Shown here piece by piece: positions 2,869 to 59,537 of a stretch of DNA of 64,000 bases. The notes under the pieces are model-generated. The model was not told where the DNA came from and made no database searches. It saw nothing but the letters and a program-made list of their open reading frames with translations. A program made the position numbers and the translations under genes. The DNA comes from Octopus bimaculoides (taxonomy: Eukaryota), in the NCBI RefSeq assembly GCF_001194135.2, contig NC_068995.1, forward strand, positions 40,122,221-40,186,220. The letters run 5' to 3'. The stretch's first letter is position 1; each line of letters opens with the position of its first letter.

Positions 2869-3217
2869 GTGGAGGCGCAATGGCCTAGTGGTTAGGGCAG
2901 CGGATTCGCGGTCGTAGGATCGCGGTTTCGATTCCCAGACCGGGCGTTGTGAGTGTTTATTGAGCGAAAACACCTAAAGCCCCACGAGGCTCCAGCAGGG
3001 GATGGTGGTGAACCCTGCTGTACTCTTTCACCACAACTTTCTCTCATTCTTTCTTCCTGTTGTGCCTGTAATTCAAAGGACCAGCCTTGTCACACTCTTT
3101 GTCACGCTGACTCTCCCCCGAGAACTACGTTAAGGATACACGTTAATTTCACGAGTAGGCTGTTACGCTGATCGGATCAACTGGAACCCTCGTCGTCGTA
3201 ACCGACGGAGTGCCAAC
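2869..3217 (+). mobile_element. tRNA-derived SINE family A, near full length
   Basis: A box tggcctagtggttagg and B box ggtttcgattcc. Body is shared with eight other copies. TSD tagtacgta at 2858-2866 and 3218-3226. Confidence 0.88.
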
Positions 3218-13395: not shown

Positions 13396-14007
13396 GGAGG
13401 CGCAATGGCCCAGTGGTTAGGGCAACGGACTCGCGGTCATAGGATCGCGGTTTCGATTCCCCGACCGGGTGTTGTGCGTGTTTATTGAGCTAAAACACCT
13501 AAAGCTCCACGAGGCTCCGGCAGGGTATGGTGGTGAACCCTGCTGTACTCTTTCACCACAACTCTCTCTCACTCTTACTTCCTGTTTCTGTTGTGCCTGT
13601 AATTCAAAGGGTCAGCCTTGTCACACTGTGTCACGCTGAATATCCCCGAGAACTACGTTAATGGTACACGTGCACTGTGGAGTGCTCAGCCACTTGCANN
13701 NNNNNNNNTATTGAGCTAAAACACCTAAAGCTCCACGAGGCTCCGGCAGGGTATGGTGGTGAACCCTGCTGTACTCTTTCACCACAACTCTCTCTCACTC
13801 TTACTTCCTGTTTCTGTTGTGCCTGTAATTCAAAGGGTCAGCCTTGTCACACTGTGTCACGCTGAATATCCCCGAGAACTACGTTAATGGTACACGTGCA
13901 CTGTGGAGTGCTCAGCCACTTGCACGTTTATTTCACGAGCAGGCTGTTCCGTTGATCGAATTAACTGGAACCCTCGACGTCGTAAGCGACGGAGTGCCAA
14001 CAACAAC
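13396..14007 (+). mobile_element. SINE family A; internal part duplicated across a 10-N gap (assembly overlap)
   Basis: Same consensus with a (caa)n tail. TSD agtgacgacaggg/agtgaagacaggg at 13384-13396 and 14008-14020. Confidence 0.85.
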
Positions 14008-17459: not shown

Positions 17460-18150
17460 CAATTGACGTCCTGTATCACTATAAACTTGGCATAGCGAAG
17501 GTTTCTGCTCGGTGGTTGCCACGTCTTCTGGGCTGATCAGGTCACGGGAAAATCTGACATTGTTTGAGGCAGATCCAACTGTTTTCTTGGACGGTTTTCT
17601 AAGCCAAGATGAATGTTGTCTTCAACTCTTTGAGCTAGAAACAAAGAGGTAATCCTTGAAGTGGAAACGCCCTCTCCTCACCTGCTCCAAAGAACTCCAA
17701 GGTCGTTTCATCTGCAGGGACGGTGATTTGTGGGGGTGCAAAAGGCATTGTGTTCATTGCCTATCTCCAAAAGGGCCACGCCATCAATGGAGAGTACTAT
17801 GCCAACTTACAGAGGCATTTACGAAAGGCTATCAAGACCAAACGCTAAGAAAAACGGACGAAAGGGATCTTGTTTCGTTAGGACAATGCTTCAGCACACA
17901 AACCATTGGTTTCAATGACTGCTGTCCATAACTGTGGATTCGAACTGGTTGAACATCGACCCTATTCTCCTGATTCGGCTGCATCTGACTATCATCTATT
18001 CCCCGATATGAAAAGACACTTGGCTGGGAATAAGTGTCGCTGTGAGAATGAAGTCATATTTGCTGTTGACTTTTTTGGCCAACAGGGTGAAAGCTTCCTC
18101 ACCAACGGAATCCAAGCACTTCAACATCAATGGAAGAAGTGTATAGACAG
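17460..18150 (+). mobile_element. Decayed mariner transposase, C-terminal DDD region
   Basis: KVSARWLPRLL (WVPR motif), DNA, HRPYSPDSAASDYHLFP (YSPDL motif) and GIQALQHQWKKC; frameshifts. Confidence 0.8.
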
Positions 18151-18220
18151 ACAGGCAGACTGACAGACAGACAGACAGACAGACAGGAGGTGCACGGCTT
18201 AGTGATTGCATAAATTCTGT

Positions 18221-18602
18221 GTTGGCACTCCGTCGCTTACGACGTGGAGGGTTCCAGCTGATCCGATCAACGGAACAGCCTGCTCGTGAAATTAACGTGC
18301 AAGTGGCTGAGCACTCCACAGACACGTGTACCCTTAATGTAGTTCTCGGGGATATTCAGCATGACACAGTGTGACAAGGCTGACCCTTTGAAATACAGGT
18401 ACAACAGAAACAGGAAGTAAGAGTGAGAGAAAGTTGTATTGAAAGAGTACAGCAGGGTGCACCACCATCCCCTGCCGGAGCCTCGTGGTGCTTTTAGGTG
18501 ATTTCGCTCATTAAACACTCACAACGCCCGGTCTGGGAATCGAAACCGCGATCCTATGACCGCGAGTCCGCTGCCCTAACCACTGGGCCATTACGCCTCC
18601 AC
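18221..18602 (-). mobile_element. SINE family A, full length, about 240 bp upstream of the amine oxidase exon
   Basis: Full consensus in reverse. TSD gattgcataaatt at 18204-18216 and 18603-18615. Confidence 0.9.
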
Positions 18603-18838: not shown

Positions 18839-20902
18839 ATGACGGAAAAAGAATGCAATTGGAAACTATGCGGTTCTGTGTTCTTTATTTTCACACTTGG
18901 TCTAATTGTAGGCTTTGTGACTTTTTCAATTCTGTCAGTGATCGAGTTAAAGCGATTACGTGCTGAAGTGTGTAACGAAGGTCTTGCCAGTTATATAATC
19001 GCTAATCCAGAGAAACCTGTAATATTTGCGGATTTATCACCCAAAGAAATACGTTCAGTATTCGATTACATTAAAAACCAGTCTGATTTAAATATCGTAC
19101 ATCCAGAAAAAGTTAACAGTATTAATGTTAGTTACGTGAATAATATTGAATTAATGTTACCCAAGAAATCTGAAGTTGTTGCTTATTTAGAAGGTAGGGC
19201 TGAACAGCCGCAAAGAAACGCTAAAGTTGTTATCTTTCGTGGAGACAAAAGAAAGCCTGTTGTTGAGGAGTATAATGTCGGCCCACTACCTGAGCCGACA
19301 CAGCATACCTTACAAACAACAATCCCATTTTCTTTTAGACCTGCTAGCGAGACAGAGTGGTTCATTGAAAACGACCGATTTATTCAAAAATTAGAACGAG
19401 ATTTGGGTAGAATAATGAGAGAAAGTTACGGTTCTTCCTTGTTAAACTGTGGAGACCGATGCTTGACATTCTATTTGGCAACACCTGTTTCTTCCGCCAT
19501 TACTAGAACCGAAGAAAGACTGAAGTGGATCATGCTTTCCTATCAGATGGAATATTCTTCTCTGTATCCTTTGGACATGAATATTTTATTGGATTTAACA
19601 GGGAACGATCCGATGGATTTCTCGATAAGGGCAATTTGGTACGAAGGACAACTGTTCAAAACTATCACTGAATTTGTTGACCGTTATCAAAACGATCCAT
19701 CTGTTAAAAAAGTGCGGAGGAAATTTCCGGTTAAGAATGGAAACTTATTTTCTACAGCAAATTTACGAGGCGAAACCTTTCCAACTACAGGTCAACGCCG
19801 TGTTTACCAAACAGAGCCAGACGGTAAAAGGTACCGGGTTGTTGGATCAGAAATTGAATATATGAAATGGAAATTTATCTATAGACTATCCCCAGTTACC
19901 GGGCCTCAATTATTTAATATACGCTATCAGGAAGAACGAATTATCTATGAACTTAGTCTCCAAGAAGTAGCTGTCCATTATTCAGGACAAAATCCAGGAA
20001 CAATGCTTGCTAATTATTATGATAGCTTTGCTATGTACGGCAAAGCAAATAACGGTCTGATACCAGGTGCCGATTGCCCAGAACATTCTTTGATGATCCC
20101 AACTTACTATTTTTCTCAACGAAGTAAAGACATAGTTGAAAAGAACCAATTTTCAATCTGTGTTTTCGAACAAAACACTGGGATTCCTCTGCGACGTCAC
20201 CATTCTTCAACAAAACAATCAGGAAGATTCTATACAGGAATGATGGATGATGTTTTGGTCTTTCGAACAATCACAACTGTGATCAACCGCGATTATATTT
20301 TTGACTTTGTTTTCCACCAGAACGGAGCAGTGGAAGTTCGCAGCATTCCCACAGGTTATATAATGGGGACCTACCCTAAAAACGATGAAAAACGTTACGG
20401 TAGTCACCTCCATAAACACTTACACGGAAATATTCACCAGTATTTATTCAATTACCGAATTGATATAGACATCAAAGGGATCAAAAATCGATTTGAAATG
20501 TTAAATATTGAAGGTGATAAAACTGAGAACCGAAAATGGGGAGGTGAAAAATATTATTATCAAAATAAATTTAGGAGAAAACTTGTTTCTACAGAAAAGG
20601 AGGCTGCGTACAAATTTGACTTTTCTAAACCGAAATATTTAGTCTTTAGCAACGACAAATTTAGAACCGAACAAGGTATTCCTAGATCATATAGAATCCA
20701 AATTAATTCAATGAGCAAAGAATTATTACCCCTTGATCGCAGCACGGAACGAAGTCGATCCTGGAGTCGATACCAATTAGCAGTAACTGTCCATAAAGAC
20801 AATGAGACTCGAAGCAGTTCTGAATATGTAACGTATGATGGCCTGAACCCACTTGTTGACTTTCAGAAATATATGGATGATGACGAGAGCATTGTTGATC
20901 AG
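18839..20902 (+). CDS. Copper amine oxidase (AOC1/AOC3 family) homologue, large coding exon, aa 1-688; type II membrane anchor; cofactor site degenerate
   Basis: Open frame of 688 codons. Acceptor tttttcag ends at 18838 directly before ATG; donor GATCAG|gtaaga at 20903, phase 0. N-terminal hydrophobic segment LCGSVFFIFTLGLIVGFVTFSILSV. Family motifs LSLQEVAVHYSG, YYDS, GADCP, GIPLRRHH, FDFVFHQNGAVEVR, GNIHQ.LFNYRIDIDI, RYQLAVT and ESIVDQ. Confidence 0.93.
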
Positions 20903-21293
20903 GTAAGAATCTTCTTTCGATAGTAGGTAACTTACAAGATAAGCCGAGGTCTAATCAAACCCAAATATATCCACATTTGTTGCTGTTTTACTGAACATTA
21001 CACTGATTACATACAGCATTCTTTATTAAATAAATTTTGATTAATTAAAATTTCAAGGTGGCGAGCTGGTAAAATGCTTGGAGGTATTTCCCTCCCACAA
21101 ATTTGAGGCCTTGTGATTCCAGTAGAAAGGATTATTATTATCATTATTATTATTACTATTATTCAGTAGTTTTATTCTTATAACGTGCTTTCACTTCACT
21201 ACCGAGCGCAGCTCTGTGTGCCTTGGGTATGGAGCCAGTGCATGCCATCAAAGTGACACTGGGTTAAAATATACAAAGCCCAGTATACCCATT

Positions 21294-21462
21294 GTGGAGG
21301 AGCGTGGCTTAGTGGTTAGGGTGTCAGCATCATGATCGTAAGATTGTGGTTTCGATTCCTGGACCGGGCGGCGCGTTGTGTTCTTGAGCAAAACACTTCA
21401 TTTCACGTTGCTCCAGTCCACTCAGGAAACCGGGCCCATGAGCCTGGCTTGGCTTTAAAAGG
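21294..21462 (+). mobile_element. tRNA-derived SINE family E nested in repeat D
   Basis: tgtggaggagcgtggcttagtggttagggtg...ggtttcgattcctggaccgggcg...tgttcttgagcaaaacacttcatttcacg, shared with 34830-35070. Confidence 0.8.
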
Positions 21463-22112
21463 GCACATAAAAAAATAAAGTATACCAACCATGAGTACCC
21501 GTGTGATAAGGGTACACCAGGCACATGCATCACAACCATATGTGCACGACATGGTGTTTTCATATGAAAATAAACATCGCATGAGCTTCCAGGTGGGGCC
21601 CAGTTTCTTCAGGTTGAGTAGCCCATCCTGCTGAAAAGGTCCCTGAATAAGGTTTGTTTAAGTATGTTACCAGAGGTAAATTATCCAAACTCCAAATAAT
21701 TCCTCTCAACACATGGCTATGATGCTGTGCCACTACTTCTGCTCATGATCAGAGATGCAGATATCCTCAGCCTCAAAGTGACATGCTCAAATGGTTATGG
21801 TGAAACAACTGACAAGCAAATCTGTGGTATTGAGCGGAATATTTGTTGTAGCCCATCTTTTATGTATGATTATTATTATTATTGAGTGAGAGAGCAGTGC
21901 ATGCCATCAAAGTGACACTGGGGTAAAATATACGAAGCCCATTATACCCATCATGACTACCCGTCTGATAAGGGTACACCAGGCACATGCATCACAACCA
22001 TATGTACGCGACATGATGATCTCATATCAAGATAAACAGCGCATGATCTCGCAGGTGAGGCCCAGTTAGAATTTTCTCCAGGTCGAGTAGTCCATCCCGC
22101 TCAAAAGGTCCC

Positions 22113-22183
<71 letters not shown>

Positions 22184-22185
22184 TT

Positions 22186-22636
22186 CAAGGCCGCGAGCTA
22201 GCAGAATCGTCAGCNNNNNNNNNNNNNNNNNNNNNNNNNNNNNNNNNNNNNNNNNNNNNNNNNNNNNNNNNNNNNNNNNNNNNNNNNNNNNNNNGCCTTC
22301 CAGCCTTCCGAGGTCGATTAAATAAGTACCAGTTATGCACTGGGGTCGATGTAATCGACTTACTCCCCTCTCCCAAGCTGCCCTAGTGACAACAATTTGA
22401 AATAATAATAATTATTATTACTATCAAGGCGACGAGCTGAAGAATCGTTAGCGCGCTGGACGAAACGCTTAGTGGTATTTCGCCTGTCGCTACGTTTTGA
22501 GTTCGAATTGCGCTGAAGTTGACTTGCCCTTTCATCCTCTCAGCGTCGACAAAATAAGTACCAGTTGAACACTGGGGTCGATGTAATCGACGCATCCCCT
22601 CCCCCAAAATTACTGTCCTTGTGGCAAAATTTGAAA
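22186..22636 (+). mobile_element. Two adjacent SINE family C copies separated by (TAT)n
   Basis: aaggc(c/g)gcgagct.gcagaatcgt.agc heads at about 22186 and 22427, each with the gtcgatgtaatcgac core. Confidence 0.75.
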
Positions 22637-23349
22637 CCATTATTATTATTATTGAGTGAGAGAGCAGTACATGCCTACAAAGTGAGACTGGGGTACAAAT
22701 ATACGAAGACCAATATACCCATCCGGATTAGTCCGCTGATAAAGGTACACCAGACACGTGCATCACAGCCATATATGCACGACATGGTGATTTCATATCA
22801 AGAAAAACTTGCAGATGGGGCCCAGCTAGAATTTTCTTCAGAAAGGTCCCTTAATAAGATTTGTTTAAGGACGTTGAACGAAACGCCCATGTTTCCAGAC
22901 GTGAGTTATTCAAACTCCAAAGAATTCCTCTCAACACATGGCTATGATGCTCCCCCACTACTTCTGCTCATGATCAGAGATGCACATATTGTCAATCACC
23001 CAGGGACAGACTCAACTGGTTAAGGTCAAACAACTGACAAGCAAATCTGTGGTATTGAGCAGAATATTTGTTGAAGCCCTTCTTTTACATCAACACAAAC
23101 ATGTACATGATAACACATCCAATCAGCTAATGTCTGAAGCCATGAGAACCAGTGCTTGGTACTGCATCCATCAGATGGTCAGAATCTTTCGGCTTCGCAT
23201 CACACAAAAATCTATAAACTTTCTTTCCCTTCCTTCTCCCATAGTCCTTCCATTCATCGCACCTTCTTTTATGGTTCTGCTGATCTAAAGATCTGTGGAA
23301 TAATACCAAACTAAGATCAACAACAAGTAGTCCTTGGTAAATCACGCGG

Positions 23350-23453
23350 TCGTAAACATACCAACACCGGTCGTCAAGTGGTGTGGGGAAACAAACACAG
23401 AGACACGCATAGATATATACATATACTACGTACATACATACGTATATATATAC

Positions 23454-23519
<66 letters not shown>

Positions 23520-23670
23520 GACGGTCTTCTTTCAGTTTTCGTCTACCAAATCCACTCTCAAAGCTTTCGCCTGCTCGAGGCTATAGTAGAAAAGACACTT
23601 CTCCAAGGTGTCCCGCAGTGCGATTGAAACTGGAACCATGTGATCGAGAAGCAAACCATGCCTGCGCCTA
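23350..23670 (-). mobile_element. SINE family B with internal (TA)n
   Basis: Core gtctaccaaatccactc and internal microsatellite. Confidence 0.75.
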
Positions 23671-24272
23671 CATCTAATTAATTTTTAATCAATTAAAATT
23701 TCGGGTACTTCTCCCCCTCCTCCCCCATTAGAATTAGTAATTTAGATAAAGATTATTCTCGTCGCAAACAAGGTTATTTTCTTTAATTAAGGCTAACTTC
23801 AATAAATATCCTATTGTCTACTTTACTATTAAGTTTTCATGCAGCAAGTGATTTTCTTTCAGCCATTCTTTTAAGTTATTCGACCACTCGGTTTTAAATC
23901 ATTAATAATCTATATATTCCCTAAACATTGTCAAATCTGAAGTAACGAATAAGATATGATTTGCTGAGAACGCCTAATAAGACCGAAACGTGTACGAAAT
24001 TGCCATTCCTCTGCTTGAGATCAAACTCACTGACTGCCGCATTCTATAGTCTATTAATTTTAATTAATTAAAATTTCTTAGCTAACTCCATTAGTAATTG
24101 TTAGGGCCTACTTTAATATCCATCTGTCTCACTGGTTGCTTGTATGTCAGTCTTTCTGTCTGTTAGAGTGGTTGTCTACTTGGCTGTCTACGTTCTTGTC
24201 TGTCTATTTCTTCGTCCAGTCGTCTATCTAACTTTCTGACTAACTCTCCGTTTGCTTGTCTATCTATCTACC

Positions 24273-24565
24273 CGTGGTTAGAGCGTCGGGCTCACAATCA
24301 CGAGGTAGCGAGTTCGATTCCTGGACCGAGCTGTGGGTTGTGTTCGTTAGCAAGTTCACTCGGCTGTAGAAATGAGATGCGAAGTCACCAGTGCCAAGCT
24401 GCGCCAACCTTTGCCTTTCTCTTGGATAACATCGGTGGCATGCAGAGGGGAGACTGATATGAATGGGAAACTGCTAGTCTTCCATAAAACAACCTTGCCA
24501 GGACTTGTGCCTCGGAGGGTAACTTTCTAAGTGCAATACCATGGTCATTCATTACCGAAGGGGGT
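24273..24565 (+). mobile_element. tRNA-headed SINE related to family E
   Basis: gtggttagagcgtcgggctcacaatcacgaggtagcgagttcgattcctggaccg head. Confidence 0.6.
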
Positions 24566-24689
24566 TCTTTACCCTTTTTATCTACCCGTTTGACAACCTT
24601 TCCCTGCATCTCCGTTTGTTCATTTCCTTGGACTCCTTTCTTGATTTATTCTTTACAGCAGAACTCTCCCTCTCATTGTCTCTCCACCT

Positions 24690-24884
24690 CCTCTCTTTCT
24701 CTTTCTTCTGTACTTCTCTCTTCTCTCTTAAGTTACAGCAGATCTTTCACTTTCTTTCTGTCTGTCTGTCTGGTTGTTTGTCTCTCCTTCTGTCTCTCTG
24801 TCTCTCTCTCACTCTCTCGCTCCATCCCCTTTTCCTCCTCTGGCTTGCACACGCACGCACGCACGCACCCTTTCTCTTTTTCCA

Positions 24885-24920
<36 letters not shown>

Positions 24921-25206
24921 TTTTTCTCTTTCTCTCACTCTTGCACTCTGCTTTCGTATCTGTCTGTATATCTCTCTCTCTTTCTCTTTCTCAAACACAC
25001 ACACACTCACACACACACGCACACACACACTCTCACACACACATACACACACGCACATACACTCTGTCTCTCCCATAAATTCTTACGACAGATCTTTCTC
25101 ACACACACACTCTCTCTCTCTCTCTCTCTCTCTCATTCTCACTCTATCTCTCTCATTCTCTCCACTCTCAATTCTTCCTTCCTTGGCTAATACATACACA
25201 CACACA

Positions 25207-25249
<43 letters not shown>

Positions 25250-25250
25250 C
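24690..25250. repeat. Compound (CT)n/(CA)n low-complexity tract
   Basis: Direct observation. Confidence 0.9.
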
Positions 25251-25837
25251 TCTTATATTCCTCAACAAAACGTTTGTGTTTAACTTCCGTTTTATATATC
25301 TGATAACTGTCGTCTGAAACCTATCAATACCATCTGCATGCAATATCCTGCAAAGATTATTTTCATTTTCCTTATCTTTAGTTCTGATGAAGCGGTTAGG
25401 GCGGTAGAAACCAGACTGTCGTTGTTTTTGTAATAACTTGTTGTTGTTGTTGCTGCTGCTGCTGCCGCACTGTTTGTCTTGCTCTTGTTGATGTTACAAT
25501 TGTTATTGCCGTTGTTTTGTCCCAGGATCCTGTCACTTCCCGGAAGTTTTGTAAATCTAGAACTAATATTGTACAATGTCTTTACTTTTTATTTTGTGCA
25601 TCATTTTTTTAATCTACATTTTTTTTTTTTTTTGAATTCCAAGAAATTTGAAATCTTGCAAATAATTTATGGAATCAAACGTTTTTAGGATGCCATTTTA
25701 ATGGTCACTTGAAACAGATGTGAAAAAAAAAACAAACGGGTGCTACGTTGCAGCAATGTTAGATTACACAACATTTCCTGTGTTAAGACAGGAATAGCAA
25801 CAATGATAACATTGTATCATAGCAGACGAGACAGAAA

Positions 25838-26212
25838 TACTCTTTTACTCTTTTACTTGTTTCAGTCAATTGACTGCGGCCATGTTGGAGCACCGCCTTT
25901 TAGTCGAGCAAATCGACCCCAGGACTTATTCTTTGGAAGCCTAGTACTTATTCTTTCGGTCTCTTTTGCCGAACGGTTAAGTTACGGTTGTCAAGCGATG
26001 CTGGGGGGACAAACACAGACACACATATATATATATATACATATATACATATATACGACGGGCTTCTTTCAGTTTCCGTCTACCAAATCCACTCACAAGG
26101 CTTTGGTCGGTCCGAGGCTATAGTAGAAGACACTTGCCCAAGGTGCCACGCAGTGGGAATGAACCCGGAACCATGTGGTTGGTAAGCAAGCTACTTACCA
26201 CATAGCCACTCC
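25838..26212 (-). mobile_element. SINE family B, full length
   Basis: Head, core, internal TA/CA microsatellite and tail ending (gtaaaaga)n, all in reverse. Confidence 0.85.
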
Positions 26213-26256
26213 TGGTTATCTTTATGACAAAAATATGCCAATATTCAACGTCGATA

Positions 26257-26472
26257 AGGCAGCGAGCTAGCAGACTCCTTAGCACGCTGGGCAAAATGCT
26301 TAGCGACATTTCATTCGTCCTTACGTTCTGAGTTCAAATGCTGCTGAAGTCAGTTTTGCCTTTCAACTTTCTGGAGTCGATGAAATAAGTACTAAATGAA
26401 CACTGGAATCGATATAATCGACTTACCCGCTCCCCCGAAATTGCTGGCATTGTGTCAAAAATTTGAAATCAA
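26257..26472 (+). mobile_element. SINE family C
   Basis: aaggcagcgagctagcaga...ttacgttctgagttcaaat...ttttgcctttca...ggcattgtgtcaaaaatttgaaa. Confidence 0.75.
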
Positions 26473-27069
26473 TATTCAACATTAATCACATTTTAATTAT
26501 GCCAAAGTACAAGGCTACTCTGGCTTTCTTACCTAATCTTTACGTAGCTTTATAATAATTTCCAAAATTGATTTTTAATGTGTTCAATATTATAGAATAG
26601 TGAGAAAATCAAAGAAACTCATACGCTATTTTTGAAAATTATTCCTTTCTTCCATTTATTATGATAATTTTCTGTTTGTTTTGTTTTTAAGAGTACATTT
26701 CATGTTCTGCAATTTTTTTTCAAGGTACGACTACATTTTTGCCTATATGCTTTCCTTGGCGTGGCACCTCTGTTTGTCAGAATTTGTGTCTGGAAAACTT
26801 TTTACTAGAGATCGCACAGTGACTGGCCAGTCACGTGTGTAACACTTCGGATGACTGCCCTATTAGCTAGAACTAGTGTCTCTGCAAGCAGTGGATTTCC
26901 GGAGGCACACCCTCAGCCACACTCAGTTGTCCTACTTAAAGACACCAAATTATTGGTTTTTGACAAATCGTAGACACTTCTTCCCCTTCCTTTGCAAACA
27001 TTAGTGTGAATAGTCCATAAAATCTCAATTAAAATATGAATTACGTTCAATCTCCTATACAGTCATTCG

Positions 27070-27101
<32 letters not shown>

Positions 27102-27458
27102 TGTATGTATGTATGTATGTATGTATGTATGTATGTTGCACTGTTCCAAAGGTCCCAGTTGTCCCATCTAGAGTGAGGCCATGTCAACAGCTTGTGATTC
27201 AAAGGCCCACAGCTATTTAACGCCTTTCCAAAACATCTGGGGGATCTTCATGGAGTGGGGTTAGATGTTTTCAAGAAACAACTTGATCTCCTGTTGTCCA
27301 AGGCCCCACATGAACCAATATCAAAACTGGAGACGCAAAAGAGGGCAGCACTGTCGACAACCCTTCTTCACCAAAAGCTAATCACTTAAGATTAGCCATT
27401 AAAAAATTGATTACACTTGCGGTGCCTCAGCATGCCCACAGCCTTAGGGCTGAAACGC

Positions 27459-27852
27459 TGTTGTTGTTGTTGTTGGTACTCCGTCGCTTACGACGTCGAT
27501 GGTTCCAGTTGATCCGATCAACGGAACAGCCTGCTCGTGAAATTAACGTGCAAGTGGCTGAGCACTCCACAGACACGTGTACTCTTAACGTAGTTCTCGG
27601 GGATATCCAGCGTGACACAGTGTGACAAGGCTGGCCCTTTGAATTACAGGTACAACAGAAACAGGAAGAAAGAGTGAGAGAAAGTAGCGGTGAAAGAGTA
27701 CAGCAGGGTTCACCACCATCCCCTGCCGGAGCCTCGTAGAGCTTTAGGTGTTTTCGCTCAATAAACACTCACAACGCCCGGTCTGGGAATCGAAACCGCG
27801 ATCCTATGACCGCGAGTCCGCTGCCCTAACCACTGGGCCATTGTGCCTCCAC
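27459..27852 (-). mobile_element. SINE family A, full length, in the amine oxidase intron
   Basis: Full consensus in reverse with (caa)n tail. TSD gggctgaaacg at 27447-27457 and 27854-27864. Confidence 0.9.
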
Positions 27853-27949
27853 TGGGCTGAAACGTATAAAAGAATAAATGAATAAAAGCGCGCGCGTGTG
27901 TGCACGTCCGTGGACTTCTGGCCAACCTGACTGATGCTCATCGCTTCTT

Positions 27950-41608: not shown

Positions 41609-41946
41609 GTGGAGGCGCAATGGCCCAGTGTTTAGGGCAGCGGACTCGCGGTCATAGCATCACGGTTTCGATTCCCAGACCGGGCGTTGTGAGTGTTTAT
41701 TGAGCGAAAACACCTAAAGCTCCAGCTCCACGAGGCTCCGGCAGGGGATGGTGGCGAACCCTGCTGTACTCTTTCACCACAATTTTCTCTCACTCTTACT
41801 TCCTGTTTCTGTTATACCTGTAATTCAAAGGGTCAGCTTTTTGTCACTCTGTGTCACGCTGAATATCCCCGAGAACTACATTAAGGGTACACGTGTCTGT
41901 GGAGTGCTCAGCCACTTGCACGTTAATTTCACGAGCAGGCTGTTCC
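41609..41946 (+). mobile_element. SINE family A, 3'-truncated
   Basis: Runs from gtggaggcgcaatggcccagtg to gcaggctgttcc. Confidence 0.85.
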
Positions 41947-50233: not shown

Positions 50234-50870
50234 TACGAGGTCTGATCAATAAGTATCCGTATTGTTGCTATAGTAACGAAGCTAAAGTCCGCTGAGTGAA
50301 GCGGCTTGGCAAAGACTGACCTTGAACTCTGCTGAGCATAAGCAGTAAGTTTTAGTGTTCTAACTCACTTCTACTGTTTACAACAGTGCTTGAAAGGATC
50401 GCGTATGGCATGTGATCGTCGCATTGACCGTGACAGAGAAAGTTTTCATGGTGATACCTGCTCAGAGGCTGACGCAAAGATGCAGAAAAGGTATGAAGAG
50501 GAGTGTATGAGCCGCACACAAATGTACGAATGGTTCAGACGTTTCCAAGATGGCCGAAAAATGTCGATATTGACGAACGTTTTGGGAGATACGCAACCAT
50601 CAGAACTGAGAAAAACATTGCAGAATTGCGTGCAGCTGTGATGGCAAATCGTCGAATCTCCATCCATGAGTTATCAGAGGATATGCAGATTAGTTACGGT
50701 TCAGTTCAATTCATTATCACTGAAGATTTGAGTATGAGACGCGTGTGTGACAAGTTAGGGACAAAACTGCTTTCAGCTGACCAAATAGACACACGGGTTT
50801 CAGTTGCACAAGATTGTGTCGGGAACGAAGAAAACTTTTTGAAAACTCTGTTCGTCTTTCTCTTTCATGG
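50234..50870 (+). mobile_element. Mariner 5' portion (TIR plus HTH region)
   Basis: tacgaggtctgatcaataagtatccg TIR. MSRTQMYEWFRRFQDGR, VMANRRISIHELSEDMQISYGSVQFIITEDLSMRRVCDK. Confidence 0.8.
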
Positions 50871-51132
50871 TCATTGTGACGATCACACGCTACACACCTT
50901 CCTTCCAAGCACTGCTATAAACAGAGGAAGTAAGCTAGAACGTTGAAATTTAGTGCGCATGCACAGCAGTGTTCAGGGTCAATCTGCACCAAGCAGCTTT
51001 ACTCAGCGAGCGTCAGCTTCGTTTCTATGGCAACAATTCGGATACTTATTGATCAGACCACTTATATATTTATATATATGTACATATGCATGTATACATA
51101 TGCATATGCATGTATATATATGCATATGCATG

Positions 51133-51874: not shown

Positions 51875-52100
51875 ACATGTGTGTGTGTGTGGACTGTGTC
51901 TGTATTTGGCCCCCATCATCGCTTGACAACCGGTTTTGGTGCGTTTACGTCCACGTAACGTAGCGGTTCGGTAAAAGAGATTGATAGAATAAGTACTAGG
52001 CTTTACAAAAAATAAGTCCTGGGGTCGATTTGTTCGACTAAAACCCTTCAAGGTGGTGCTGCAGCATGACCGCAGTTAAATGGCTGAAAAAGGTAAAAGA
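51875..52100 (+). mobile_element. SINE family B, 3' half
   Basis: cgcttgacaaccgg...aataagtcctggggtcgatttg...ggtggtgctgcagcatgaccgcag tail. Confidence 0.8.
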
Positions 52101-52114
52101 ATAAATATTTATAC

Positions 52115-52148
<34 letters not shown>

Positions 52149-52189
52149 TCTGCAAACGAAAACCAAACAAGATGGTAGAGAAAACTCAC

Positions 52190-52417
52190 TGCGACACGAT
52201 CCCAAGTAAGCAATGCTGACGGACTTTCTATGTCGACAGTTATATTTCAGTAGACTGCAATGGTTCCGATATTCTTTGCCATCAGAACCACATAGTTTAC
52301 CACGATAGTTCTGGAAGCGGGATGGCAGTGTACAATTAGGAGCGCAAATACAGCGCGGTTGCCCTCCTCGCATGCGACAGACTTTGTTTGCACCACAGTT
52401 TACGTTTTCGCAGTTTG
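52190..52417 (-). CDS. FST: Follistatin FS domain 1 exon (EGF-like plus Kazal)
   Basis: Acceptor tttcag| and donor CGCA|gtgagt; 228 nt, phase 1/1. NCENVNCGANKVCRMRGGQPRCICAPNC...LCGSDGKEYRNHCSLLKYNC...IAYLGSCR has the 10-Cys FS pattern. Confidence 0.92.
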
Positions 52418-54069: not shown

Positions 54070-54456
54070 GTTGTTGGTACTACGTCGCTTACGACGTCGA
54101 GGGTTCCAGTTGATCCGATCAACGGAAAAGCCTGCTCATAAAATTAACGTAAAAGTGGCTGAGCACTCCACAGACATGTATACCCTTAACGTAGTTCTCG
54201 GGGGAGATTCAGCGTGACACAGATTGTGACAAGGCTGACCCTTTGAATTACAGGCACAACAGAAACAGGAAGTAAGAGTGAGAGAAAGTTGTGGTGAAAG
54301 AGTACAGCAGGGTTCGCTACCATCCTCTTCCGGATCCTCGTGGAGCTTTAGGTGTTTTCGCTCAATAAACACTCACAACGCCCGGTCTGGGAATCGAAAC
54401 CGCGATCCTATGACCGCGAGTCCGCTGCCCTAACCACTGGGCCATTGCGCCTCCAC
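54070..54456 (-). mobile_element. SINE family A, full length, in a follistatin intron
   Basis: Full consensus in reverse. Confidence 0.88.
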
Positions 54457-54744
54457 TGTTGAACTAAATCACAGAAATAATTGTCAAATATTCTGAAGTT
54501 GTCTCCCTTCCACTTGTAGGTGAAATTTTAACAAATTTTATTTGATCTATTACACAAAGCGTATCAGCACGGATCTTACAAATTAACTGAGATAGGTTGT
54601 ATGGAGAACGATGCAGTCTGTATTTAATCTAGGGAGCTTGTTATAGATTAATTGATCTATTTAGCCTATATAATTGTTAAATTTATTTAAATGTTAAAAA
54701 TGCTAATAAAGCTAAATGAAGAAGCAAAACGAAACGTTACTTAC

Positions 54745-58477: not shown

Positions 58478-58866
58478 GTGGAGGCGCAATGGCCCAGTGG
58501 TTAGGGCAGCGGACTCGCGGTCATAGGATCGCAGTTTCGATTCCCAGACCGGGCGTTGTGAGTGTTTATTGAGAGAAAACACCTAAAGCTCCACGAGGCT
58601 CCGGCAGGAGATGGTGACGAACCCTGCTGTACTCTTTCACCACAACTTTCTCTCGCTCTTACTTCCTGTTTCTGTTGTGCCTGTAATTCAAAGGGTCAGC
58701 CTCGTCACACTGTGTCACGTTGAATATCCCCGAGAACTACGTTAAGGGTACACGTGTCTGTGGCGTGCTCAGCCACTTGCACGTTAATTTCACGAGCAGG
58801 TTGTTCCGTTGATCGGATCAACTGGAACCCTCGACGTCGTAAGCGACGGAGTGCCAACAACAACAA
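58478..58866 (+). mobile_element. SINE family A, full length
   Basis: Full consensus ending in (caa)n. Confidence 0.88.
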
Positions 58867-59184: not shown

Positions 59185-59537
59185 GTTGTTGGCACTCCGT
59201 CGCTTACGACGTCGAGGGTTCCAGTGGATCTGATCAACGGAACAGCCTGCTCGTGAAATTAACGTGCAAGTGGCTGAGCGCTCCACAGACACGTGTACCC
59301 TTAACGTAGTTCTCGGGGATATTCAGCGTGACACGGCTGACCCTTTGAATTACAGGCACAACAGAAACAGGAAGTAAGAGTGAGAGAAAGTTGTGGTGGA
59401 AGAGTACAGCAGGGTTCGCCACCATCCCCTGCCGGAGCCTCGTGGAGCTTTAGGTGTTTTCGCTCAATAAACACTCACAACGCCCGGTCTGGGAATCGAA
59501 ACGGCGATCCTATGACCGTGAGTCCACTGCCCTAACC
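59185..59537 (-). mobile_element. SINE family A, head cut off by a gap
   Basis: Reverse consensus up to ccctaacc, then N gap. Confidence 0.88.

What the first reader, a model, noticed from the sequence alone, without database searches (positions are those of the whole stretch)
20279..20296. TPQ precursor tyrosine replaced by arginine (N-R-D-Y)
Seen: GTG ATC AAC CGC GAT TAT gives V-I-N-R484-D-Y inside VLVFRTITTVINRDYIFDFVFHQNG. The family consensus is T-x-x-N-Y-D-Y. CGC differs from TAC at two bases, so a single sequencing error is unlikely. A-to-I editing reads A as G and cannot turn CGC into a Tyr codon.
Basis: partly seen in the sequence, partly recalled or inferred. Interest (0 to 1): 0.8.

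Follow-up and report, generated by a model that had tools for sequence, protein, structure and literature searches.

The report
Octopus copper amine oxidase turned pseudoenzyme
The only copper amine oxidase gene found in octopuses has lost the tyrosine that becomes its quinone cofactor and two of its three copper-binding histidines, yet natural selection has kept the rest of the protein intact, so it is most likely a conserved "dead enzyme" with a non-catalytic job.

Summary
Window 20279-20296 reads V-I-N-R-D-Y, and CGC (20288-20290) encodes Arg484 of a 783-aa, two-exon copper amine oxidase (CAO) homologue. It is identical to Octopus bimaculoides XP_052829248.1. Alignment to human diamine oxidase crystal sequences puts Arg484 exactly on the topaquinone (TPQ) residue.

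This is not an error or a decaying pseudogene.
- O. sinensis and O. vulgaris share all three changes.
- Another octopodid and Argonauta have Gln at the TPQ site.
- Cuttlefish and squid-like orthologues are fully canonical.
- dN/dS is 0.12-0.19 among octopodids and about 0.05 against Argonauta, as low as between the intact decapodiform orthologues.
- Of 76 family-invariant columns, the only three that differ between Octopus and Argonauta are cofactor sites.
- No intact octopod paralogue appeared in two large searches.

Best reading: a membrane-anchored CAO-fold pseudoenzyme fixed before the Octopus/Argonauta split. What it actually does (binding or adhesion) is inferred, not shown. Expression could not be demonstrated here.

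The parts
18839..20902 (+). Coding exon A (codons 1-688) of the CAO-like gene. Starts at ATG right after 'ttttcAG' and ends at CAG|GTAAGA.
   Evidence: Open frame; splice donor read directly; Pfam PF01179 E=5e-85, PF02727, PF02728; spliced product identical to XP_052829248.1.
20903..33148 (+). Single 12.2-kb intron (718 N in gaps; microsatellites and SINE copies). The intron position is conserved in O. sinensis (7.0 kb) and Argonauta (5.2 kb).
   Evidence: No alternative canonical exon was found in it or in the gap-free orthologous introns.
33149..33436 (+). Coding exon B (codons 689-783 plus TAA stop), after the acceptor 'ttttgtAG'.
   Evidence: aligned to the human DAO C-terminus, E=8e-19.
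20288..20290 (+). CGC = Arg484, at the position of the TPQ precursor tyrosine (human DAO TPQ461).
20435..20443 (+). CAC CAG TAT = His533-Gln-Tyr535. This is the copper-ligand H-x-H motif with the second His (hDAO His512) replaced by Tyr.
33182..33184 (+). CGA = Arg700, replacing the third copper-ligand His (hDAO His675). Fixed as CGA in all octopods examined.
20021..20023 (+). GAT = Asp395, the retained catalytic-base aspartate (hDAO Asp373).
   Evidence: Asp373 is described as the catalytic residue in PMC7144023.
18872..18943 (+). Residues 12-35, a hydrophobic N-terminal segment (putative type II signal-anchor) conserved across coleoid orthologues.
   Evidence: Strongest 19-residue Kyte-Doolittle window starts at residue 14 (mean 2.55); N-termini alignment. 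No dedicated predictor was run.

Best explanation
The gene encodes a copper amine oxidase (CAO) homologue that can no longer make or use its cofactors. The tyrosine that is auto-oxidised to topaquinone is Arg484. Two of the three histidines that hold the Cu(II) needed for TPQ biogenesis and for turnover are Tyr535 and Arg700. It therefore cannot be a TPQ/Cu amine oxidase.

The rest of the protein is kept by purifying selection: the N-terminal membrane anchor, N2/N3 and catalytic-domain fold residues, cysteines, glycosylation sites, the D-x-D motif and the catalytic-base Asp. It is thus a pseudoenzyme, not a pseudogene.

Most parsimonious history (inferred):
1. On the octopod stem, after the split from decapodiforms and before Argonauta and Octopodidae diverged, Tyr became Gln (TAC to CAA, probably via His) and His3 became Arg (CAT to CGA).
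2. Once catalysis was lost, the remaining cofactor sites drifted independently: His1 to Tyr in Argonauta, His2 to Tyr in Octopodidae, and Gln to Arg in the O. bimaculoides/sinensis/vulgaris lineage.

Shown: loss of cofactor residues, lineage distribution, purifying selection, and site-specific release of constraint.

Inferred, lower confidence: the protein works as a cell-surface or secreted CAO-fold scaffold that binds something (an amine, peptide or partner protein) without oxidising it. This is comparable to the adhesive, non-enzymatic side of VAP-1/AOC3. Arg700 may fill the former copper site structurally.
For: - **Active-site mapping:** R484 = TPQ461, H533 = His510, Y535 = His512, R700 = His675, D395 = Asp373 (Asp373 catalytic in PMC7144023).
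- **Family membership by sequence:** PF01179 at 286 bits; human DAO E=2e-109.
- **Lineage pattern:** O. sinensis and O. vulgaris are identical at all sites. A third octopodid (L007) has CAA (Gln) plus HQY. Argonauta has CAA (Gln), YQH and Arg700. The Sepia/Acanthosepion AOC1 cluster and a second decapodiform are canonical: NYDY, HQH, HHIPH.
- **Selection:** dN/dS is 0.19 (O. bimaculoides vs O. sinensis), 0.12-0.13 (vs L007, dS 0.27) and about 0.05 (vs Argonauta). The intact decapodiform pair gives 0.087. Fisher p ranges from 2e-10 to 1e-151.
- **Intact ORF:** the probability of no stop codon under neutrality is 3e-6 to 6e-40 or lower. Length (783 aa) and intron position are conserved.
- **Specificity of the loss:** of 65-76 columns that are at least 95% conserved in 85-119 intact CAOs, octopods differ at only 4-6, and the cofactor positions are among them. 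The only conserved columns that differ between Octopus and Argonauta are 484, 533 and 535: 3/4 cofactor sites vs 0/72 others, p=5.7e-5.
- **Other checks:** no alternative canonical exon. Precedent: VAP-1 Y471F is inactive with expression and structure unaffected, and VAP-1 has a separate adhesive role (PMC6306676).
Against: - No direct evidence of transcription, splicing or protein was obtained here. The exact octopus product is on record only on genome contigs, while the Sepia orthologue is on 142 transcript-sized contigs. Expression may therefore be low or tissue-restricted.
- dS against Argonauta is saturated, so that ratio is only approximate.
- No 3-D model could be made, so the roles proposed for Arg700, Arg484 and Asp395 are conjecture.
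- The proposed binding or adhesion function has no direct support.
- The octopod lineage evolves about 1.6 times faster than Sepia (Tajima test). This shows some relaxation of constraint or a functional shift.
Confidence: 0.82

Rival explanations
1. It is a decaying pseudogene: a CAO gene that lost its function and happens not to have picked up a stop codon yet.
For: Three catalytic or cofactor residues are lost. No octopus transcript contig was found for the exact product. Amino-acid change is about 1.6 times faster than in Sepia.
Against: The ORF is intact at 783 aa with the same intron position in four octopod genomes that span saturated synonymous divergence. P(no stop | neutral) is 6e-40 or lower. 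dN/dS is 0.05-0.19 with Fisher p of 2e-10 or lower. 72 of 72 non-cofactor invariant columns are unchanged between Octopus and Argonauta.
Confidence: 0.03
2. It is a sequencing, assembly or annotation artefact, or a private variant of the sequenced individual. The real gene would have Tyr.
For: The window comes from a gapped draft with 5,875 N. Raw reads were not available.
Against: The same CGC codon is in the independently assembled O. sinensis genome, and the O. vulgaris protein also carries VINRDY. Another octopodid and Argonauta carry CAA. Two other cofactor residues are changed as well. The site lies in the middle of a 2,064-nt exon, far from any gap.
Confidence: 0.01
3. It is still an enzyme, but with different chemistry: a new cofactor or a metal-independent activity built on the CAO fold using the retained Asp395, Tyr486, His533 and His703.
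For: The catalytic-base Asp and the rest of the N-x-D-Y motif are invariant in octopods, although the other 'dead' mollusc clades lost the Asp. Arg700 is fixed in all octopods.
Against: The replaced positions are not conserved among octopods (R or Q at 484; H or Y at 533; Y or H at 535). That is the signature of relaxed sites rather than a new catalytic centre. TPQ biogenesis needs Cu(II) held by the three histidines (established CAO biochemistry; PMC6306676). No known CAO-fold enzyme works without TPQ.
Confidence: 0.07
4. RNA editing or alternative splicing restores a canonical active site in the mRNA.
For: Octopus recodes many transcripts by A-to-I editing (general knowledge). The intron is long and contains assembly gaps.
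Against: CGC has no A. TAT can only become TGT (Cys), and CGA only CGG (Arg); this follows directly from the codons. tblastn with the canonical Sepia C-terminus and TPQ region finds only the known exons in the window and in the gap-free O. sinensis and Argonauta loci.
Confidence: 0.01

Closest known systems
Human diamine oxidase (AOC1/hDAO; PDB 3HI7, 3MPH)
   Same: It is the best solved-structure match (E=2e-109 over residues 57-688, E=8e-19 for the C-terminus). It has the same N2/N3/catalytic domain order, and the catalytic Asp, N-x-D-Y frame, D-x-D motif and C-terminal H-x-E-D are retained.
   Different: hDAO has TPQ461 and Cu ligands His510/512/675; the octopus protein has Arg484, His533/Tyr535/Arg700. 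hDAO is secreted with a signal peptide (general knowledge), whereas the octopus protein has a long N-terminal hydrophobic anchor. The hDAO channel residues Asp186 and Trp376, named in PMC7144023, align by my reading of the alignment to Leu213 and Ala398, so they are not conserved.
VAP-1 / AOC3, and its engineered Y471F mutant
   Same: It is a type II membrane-anchored CAO ectoprotein with a documented adhesive role alongside catalysis. A single change at the TPQ tyrosine abolishes activity without disturbing expression or structure (PMC6306676). The octopus protein is a natural equivalent of such an inactive form, with an N-terminal anchor.
   Different: VAP-1 is catalytically active in nature. 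Sequence similarity is lower than to AOC1 (E=2e-85). The octopus protein has also lost copper ligands. No counter-receptor is known.
Decapodiform orthologue (Acanthosepion/Sepia pharaonis 'AOC1', CAE1290654.1 cluster; P0004, P0003)
   Same: It is the one-to-one orthologue (58-60% identity). It shares the length, N-terminal anchor, cysteine pattern, glycosylation sites and RGD134.
   Different: It is fully canonical (NYDY, HQH, HHIPH) and is found on many transcript-sized contigs.
Other mollusc CAO-like proteins with degenerate active sites (scallop P0057/P0062/P0115; Tegillarca P0059/P0061; planorbid P0063/P0069/P0162)
   Same: They are members of the same family that have lost the TPQ Tyr and/or Cu ligands. 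At least one clade is conserved between genera (81% identity, similar to an intact paralogue pair at 84%).
   Different: They arose independently (separate clades). They have also lost the catalytic Asp. They coexist with intact paralogues in the same genomes, whereas no intact octopod paralogue was found.

Membership tests
Copper amine oxidase, TPQ-dependent (Pfam PF01179; EC 1.4.3.21/22) | Catalytic-domain sequence homology above the Pfam gathering score | tested here: met
   PF01179 scores 286.3 bits against a cut-off of 27 (E=5e-85). Human DAO E=2e-109.
Copper amine oxidase, TPQ-dependent (Pfam PF01179; EC 1.4.3.21/22) | N-terminal N2/N3 domains | tested here: met
   PF02727 scores 42.5 bits (cut-off 21). 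PF02728 scores 22.7 bits (cut-off 22.6).
Copper amine oxidase, TPQ-dependent (Pfam PF01179; EC 1.4.3.21/22) | TPQ precursor tyrosine in the N-Y-D/E-Y motif | tested here: not met
   The window has Arg484 (CGC), aligned to TPQ 'X' of 3MPH and Tyr of 3HI7. The column is Y in 112 of 121 relatives.
Copper amine oxidase, TPQ-dependent (Pfam PF01179; EC 1.4.3.21/22) | Three copper-ligand histidines (H-x-H plus the C-terminal His) | tested here: not met
   Only His533 is kept. His2 is Tyr535 and His3 is Arg700.
Copper amine oxidase, TPQ-dependent (Pfam PF01179; EC 1.4.3.21/22) | Catalytic-base aspartate | tested here: met
   Asp395 aligns with hDAO Asp373.
Copper amine oxidase, TPQ-dependent (Pfam PF01179; EC 1.4.3.21/22) | Amine oxidase activity, bound Cu(II) and quinone | not testable with these tools
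   This needs purified protein, with activity, ICP-MS and quinone-staining assays.
Pseudoenzyme (catalytically dead homologue kept by selection) | Loss of residues essential for the ancestral catalysis | tested here: met
   The TPQ Tyr and 2 of 3 Cu ligands are lost.
Pseudoenzyme (catalytically dead homologue kept by selection) | Intact ORF and purifying selection after the loss | tested here: met
   dN/dS is 0.05-0.19 with Fisher p of 2e-10 or lower. P(no stop | neutral) is 3e-6 or lower. 72 of 72 non-cofactor invariant columns are unchanged.
Pseudoenzyme (catalytically dead homologue kept by selection) | Expressed as mRNA and protein | tested here: inconclusive
   RefSeq models exist. The exact product is on record only on genome contigs. 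The fragment search returned nothing at all.
VAP-1/AOC3-type membrane-anchored CAO | Short cytoplasmic tail plus N-terminal signal-anchor helix | tested here: met
   A hydrophobic stretch of about 24 residues (12-35) has the highest hydropathy in the protein and is conserved in coleoid orthologues. Only hydropathy was used, with no dedicated predictor.
VAP-1/AOC3-type membrane-anchored CAO | Closest sequence relationship to AOC3 rather than AOC1 | tested here: not met
   AOC1 chains score 370 bits against 291 bits for AOC3. The cephalopod clade sits among invertebrate CAOs.

The most novel reading that the evidence does not exclude
Incirrate octopods have no working TPQ/copper amine oxidase at all. 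Their single CAO gene was converted into a membrane-anchored, non-catalytic CAO-fold protein before Argonauta and Octopodidae diverged, and has been kept under strong purifying selection ever since. This would be the first natural CAO pseudoenzyme lineage to be recognised. It would also be one of at least three independent origins in molluscs. The retained Asp395 channel would bind an amine, peptide or partner without oxidising it. The timing would coincide with the loss of the mineralised shell in octopods, since CAOs are shell-matrix proteins in bivalves (PMC4660305, PMC8059625).
Probability: 0.4. Interest if true: 0.65.

Novelty: new variant of a known kind. Interest (0 to 1): 0.5.

Why it matters
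CAOs (diamine oxidase, VAP-1) are textbook self-processing cofactor enzymes and drug targets. I found no paper on a naturally occurring, evolutionarily conserved CAO that lacks both TPQ and the copper site (0 papers for 'copper amine oxidase' plus 'pseudoenzyme').

- **A natural experiment.** The octopod protein can show what the CAO fold does apart from catalysis. That bears on the long-debated enzyme-independent (adhesive or receptor) roles of VAP-1.
- **Annotation.** RefSeq and UniProt call these proteins 'putative amine oxidase [copper-containing]'. For octopods, and for several bivalve and snail paralogues, that name implies an activity they almost certainly lack.
- **Physiology.** If octopods really have no other CAO, they must clear histamine, putrescine and other primary amines by different routes.

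The finding is solid but incremental. Pseudoenzymes are common in other families, and the function remains unknown.

Tried and rejected
- **Structure prediction.** There is therefore no 3-D model or fold search, and the structural role of Arg700/Arg484 is untested. The crystallographic SEQRES alignment was used instead.
- **Transcript-fragment search.** A search with the 163-aa junction-spanning C-terminus returned nothing, not even the known orthologues. This is a limit of the word pre-filter and carries no biological meaning.
- **Exact look-ups.** The spliced product and the exon-A read-through product gave only the genome contig or nothing.
- **Literature.** No paper links CAO with 'pseudoenzyme'. 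None cites the accession numbers. None concerns cephalopod CAO genes. The eggcase papers found for Argonauta do not mention amine oxidase. The hDAO structure paper was not held under the PMC id I recalled.
- **Rejected readings.** Alternative canonical exon; A-to-I rescue (codon content); pseudogene.
- **Not informative.** hDAO channel residues Asp186 and Trp376 are not conserved in any cephalopod orthologue, so they say nothing about the pseudoenzyme's ligand. RGD134 is a family-wide motif in molluscs, not octopod-specific.
- **Side checks.** ARAGORN found no tRNA in the SINE copies. Pfam did not recognise the mariner-like remnants.
Full report
**1. The observation**

Window 20279-20296 on the + strand reads GTG ATC AAC CGC GAT TAT, which is V-I-N-R-D-Y. 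It lies in the peptide VLVFRTITTVINRDYIFDFVFHQNG, inside a 694-codon open frame at 18839-20923. The stated sequence, coordinates and codon (CGC, 20288-20290) are all correct.

**2. The gene**

The window is eukaryotic: low GC and 19 assembly gaps totalling 5,875 N.

- The open frame ends at a consensus donor, CAG|GTAAGA, at 20902/20903.
- A six-frame motif scan found the missing C-terminus at 33149-33436, behind the acceptor ttttgtAG.
- Joining the two exons gives a 2,352-nt CDS and a 783-aa protein.
- That protein is identical to Octopus bimaculoides XP_052829248.1, 'putative amine oxidase [copper-containing]'.
- The window is base-for-base identical to GCA_001194135.2 chromosome CM046615.1 at about 40.14 Mb over the gene.
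- Pfam finds Cu_amine_oxid (PF01179, E=5e-85) plus the N2 and N3 domains.
- The best solved-structure relative is human diamine oxidase (E=2e-109), followed by bovine and human AOC3-type enzymes.

**3. The active site**

HMMER aligns Arg484 to the TPQ residue of human DAO within a long ungapped block. In 3MPH the chain sequence has the modified residue 'X' in T-V-Y-N-X-D-Y-I-W-D-F, and in 3HI7 it has Tyr.

Counting along the printed alignments gives a self-consistent mapping. The review PMC7144023 describes Asp373 as the catalytic residue.

| Window residue | Human DAO residue | Role |
|---|---|---|
| Arg484 | TPQ461 | cofactor precursor |
| His533 | His510 | Cu ligand 1 |
| Tyr535 | His512 | Cu ligand 2 |
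| Arg700 | His675 | Cu ligand 3 |
| Asp395 | Asp373 | catalytic base |

- G-N-I-H-Q-Y, where the family has H-x-H.
- S-Y-R-I-P-H, where the family has L-H-I-P-H.

In an alignment of 121 relatives these columns are Y (112), H (115), H (116) and H (93 of the 101 sequences that reach this column).

A-to-I editing cannot repair any of them. CGC has no A, TAT could only become TGT (Cys), and CGA only CGG (Arg) (codons).

**4. Distribution**

| Sequence | TPQ site | H-x-H | Third Cu-ligand position |
|---|---|---|---|
| O. sinensis, O. vulgaris | Arg (CGC read in O. sinensis) | H-Q-Y | Arg |
| Third octopodid (genomic contig L007, 91% nucleotide identity) | Gln (CAA) | H-Q-Y | not covered |
| Argonauta hians (79% identity; also Incirrata but a different family) | Gln (CAA) | Y-Q-H | Arg (CGA) |
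| Acanthosepion/Sepia pharaonis AOC1 cluster (58%) | Tyr | H-Q-H | His |
| Second decapodiform (60%) | Tyr | H-Q-H | His |

- A neighbour-joining tree recovers (decapodiforms, (Argonauta, Octopus)) with a long octopod stem.
- Parsimony puts Tyr to Gln and His3 to Arg on the octopod stem.
- Later, independent changes followed: His1 to Tyr in Argonauta, His2 to Tyr in Octopodidae, and Gln to Arg in the O. bimaculoides/sinensis/vulgaris lineage.

**5. Pseudogene or pseudoenzyme?**

All four octopod genomes keep an uninterrupted reading frame. The product is 783 aa and the intron sits at the same codon boundary in the three genomes where both exons are covered.

Nei-Gojobori estimates:

| Pair | dN/dS | Notes |
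|---|---|---|
| O. bimaculoides vs O. sinensis | 0.19 | 34 nonsynonymous vs 47 synonymous differences, Fisher p=2e-13 |
| Either Octopus vs L007 | 0.12-0.13 | dS about 0.27, unsaturated |
| Octopus vs Argonauta | about 0.05 | pN 0.113, pS 0.715, dS saturated |
| Two intact decapodiform orthologues | 0.087 | no weaker constraint in the dead copy |

- 5.4% of point substitutions in this CDS create stops. The chance of no stop under neutrality is therefore 3e-6 even for the closest pair, and 6e-40 or lower for Octopus vs Argonauta.
- Regional pN/pS profiles of the dead and intact pairs are similar along the whole protein.

**6. Specificity of the loss**

- Of 65 columns at least 95% conserved in 85 intact non-cephalopod CAOs, octopods differ at six: P322V, Y484R/Q, H533Y, H535Y, K540R (shared with decapodiforms) and H700R.
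- With a larger reference set of 119 sequences, the only three of 76 conserved columns that differ between Octopus and Argonauta are 484, 533 and 535. That is 3 of 4 cofactor sites against 0 of 72 others (Fisher p=5.7e-5). The two decapodiforms differ at none.
- Constraint has therefore been released at the cofactor sites and essentially nowhere else among the family's core positions.
- The N-terminal hydrophobic anchor, the eight cysteines, three N-x-S/T sites, the D-x-D motif and the catalytic-base Asp are all retained.
- A Tajima relative-rate test shows the octopod lineage has accumulated about 1.6 times more amino-acid changes than Sepia (93 vs 57 with the chiton P0005 as outgroup, p=0.003). 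This is consistent with a functional shift.

**7. Pitfalls checked**

- tblastn with the canonical Sepia C-terminus and TPQ region finds only the known exons in the window, in O. bimaculoides v2, and in the gap-free O. sinensis and Argonauta loci. No alternative canonical exon exists.
- The window holds no second CAO copy.
- Two database searches gave the same result. One used the octopus protein and one an intact chiton CAO, whose hit list extends down to fish diamine oxidases at about 40% identity.
- In both, the only identifiable cephalopod entries were the single Octopus cluster, Argonauta and the decapodiform orthologues. Other molluscs contributed up to four paralogues each.
- This suggests the dead gene is the only CAO of octopods. 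Only the best 120 hits are listed and whole genomes could not be searched, so this is not proven.

**8. Mechanism**

What is shown: the protein cannot form TPQ because there is no precursor Tyr. It also lacks two of the three histidines that hold the Cu(II) required for TPQ biogenesis and re-oxidation (reaction outline in PMC6306676). Yet it is maintained by selection.

What is inferred: it acts as a non-catalytic, probably membrane-anchored CAO-fold scaffold.
- The engineered VAP-1 Y471F mutant shows that a CAO with the TPQ tyrosine replaced keeps its expression and structure. VAP-1 also has an adhesive role beside catalysis.
- The invariant Asp395 and the fixed Arg700 contrast with the drifting positions 484, 533 and 535. 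This hints at a retained channel or ligand-binding role and at a structural substitute for copper.
- No structure could be computed to test either idea.

**9. Context and novelty**

- Other mollusc CAO-like proteins also have degenerate active sites: scallops (Asp to Tyr, Tyr to Gln, His1 to Ser; 81% identical between genera), the ark clam Tegillarca, and planorbid snails. They fall in separate clades, and those species also have intact paralogues.
- CAOs are recorded as shell-matrix proteins in bivalves (PMC4660305, PMC8059625). The coincidence with shell loss in octopods is only a speculation.
- Full-text searches found no paper describing a CAO pseudoenzyme or these accessions.
- The gene itself is annotated, so this is a new variant of a known family rather than a new kind of system.

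**10. Weak points**

- Expression is not demonstrated. The exact octopus product is on record only on genome contigs, while the Sepia orthologue occurs on 142 transcript-sized contigs.
- A search meant to find transcript fragments failed technically.
- The function remains unknown.

Noticed in passing
window 20435-20443 and 33182-33184: Besides the TPQ tyrosine, two of the three copper-ligand histidines are replaced (H-Q-Y535 and R700-I-P-H). Octopus and Argonauta each lost a different His of the H-x-H pair, each by a single C-to-T change to Tyr.
   Followed up: yes
proteins P0057, P0062, P0115, P0059, P0061, P0063, P0069, P0162: Several other mollusc CAO-like proteins (scallops, ark clam, planorbid snails) also lack the TPQ Tyr, the catalytic Asp and/or Cu ligands. 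They fall in separate clades from the octopod one. The scallop pair is 81% identical between genera. Dead CAOs therefore seem to have arisen repeatedly in molluscs.
   Followed up: partly
window 2869-3029(-), 13396-13554(-), 13709-13780(-), 18441-18602(+), 21291-21370(-), 27692-27852(+), 41609-41775(-), 54296-54481(+), 58478-58638(-), 59400-59537(+): A SINE-like repeat of about 160 bp with a tRNA-like core is present in 9-10 copies at 90-95% identity. One copy lies about 240 bp upstream of the CAO-like start codon and two lie in its intron. ARAGORN calls none of them a tRNA.
   Followed up: partly
window 39483-39586 (+): A full-length U6 spliceosomal RNA match (Rfam RF00026, 98.9 bits, E=2e-24), about 6 kb downstream of the CAO-like gene. 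Whether it is a gene or a retro-copy was not examined.
   Followed up: no
window 52041-52373 (-): An exon-like ORF with a Kazal-type domain (PF07648, E=2e-9). In O. sinensis a follistatin/Kazal gene lies on the minus strand downstream of the orthologue, so the synteny appears conserved.
   Followed up: partly
window 17906-18163 (+) and 50503-50946 (+): ORFs that look by eye like mariner-type transposase remnants (for example 'YSPDSAASDYHLFPDMKRHLAG'). Pfam gave no hit. The older RefSeq model XP_014786636.1 (P0124, 850 aa) had fused the first remnant to the N-terminus of the CAO-like protein.
   Followed up: partly
loci L003-L005 (Sepia transcripts) versus L002, L008 (octopus genomes): The intact cuttlefish orthologue is on record on 142 transcript-sized contigs. 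The octopus proteins are on record only on chromosome-scale genome contigs. This may mean low or restricted expression of the dead copy.
   Followed up: partly
window, whole: The assembly is a gapped draft with 19 N-runs totalling 5,875 bases, three of them in the gene's intron. It has abundant di-, tri- and tetranucleotide microsatellites, for example (TTA)n at 22113-22183 and (GT)n at 29368-29499.
   Followed up: no
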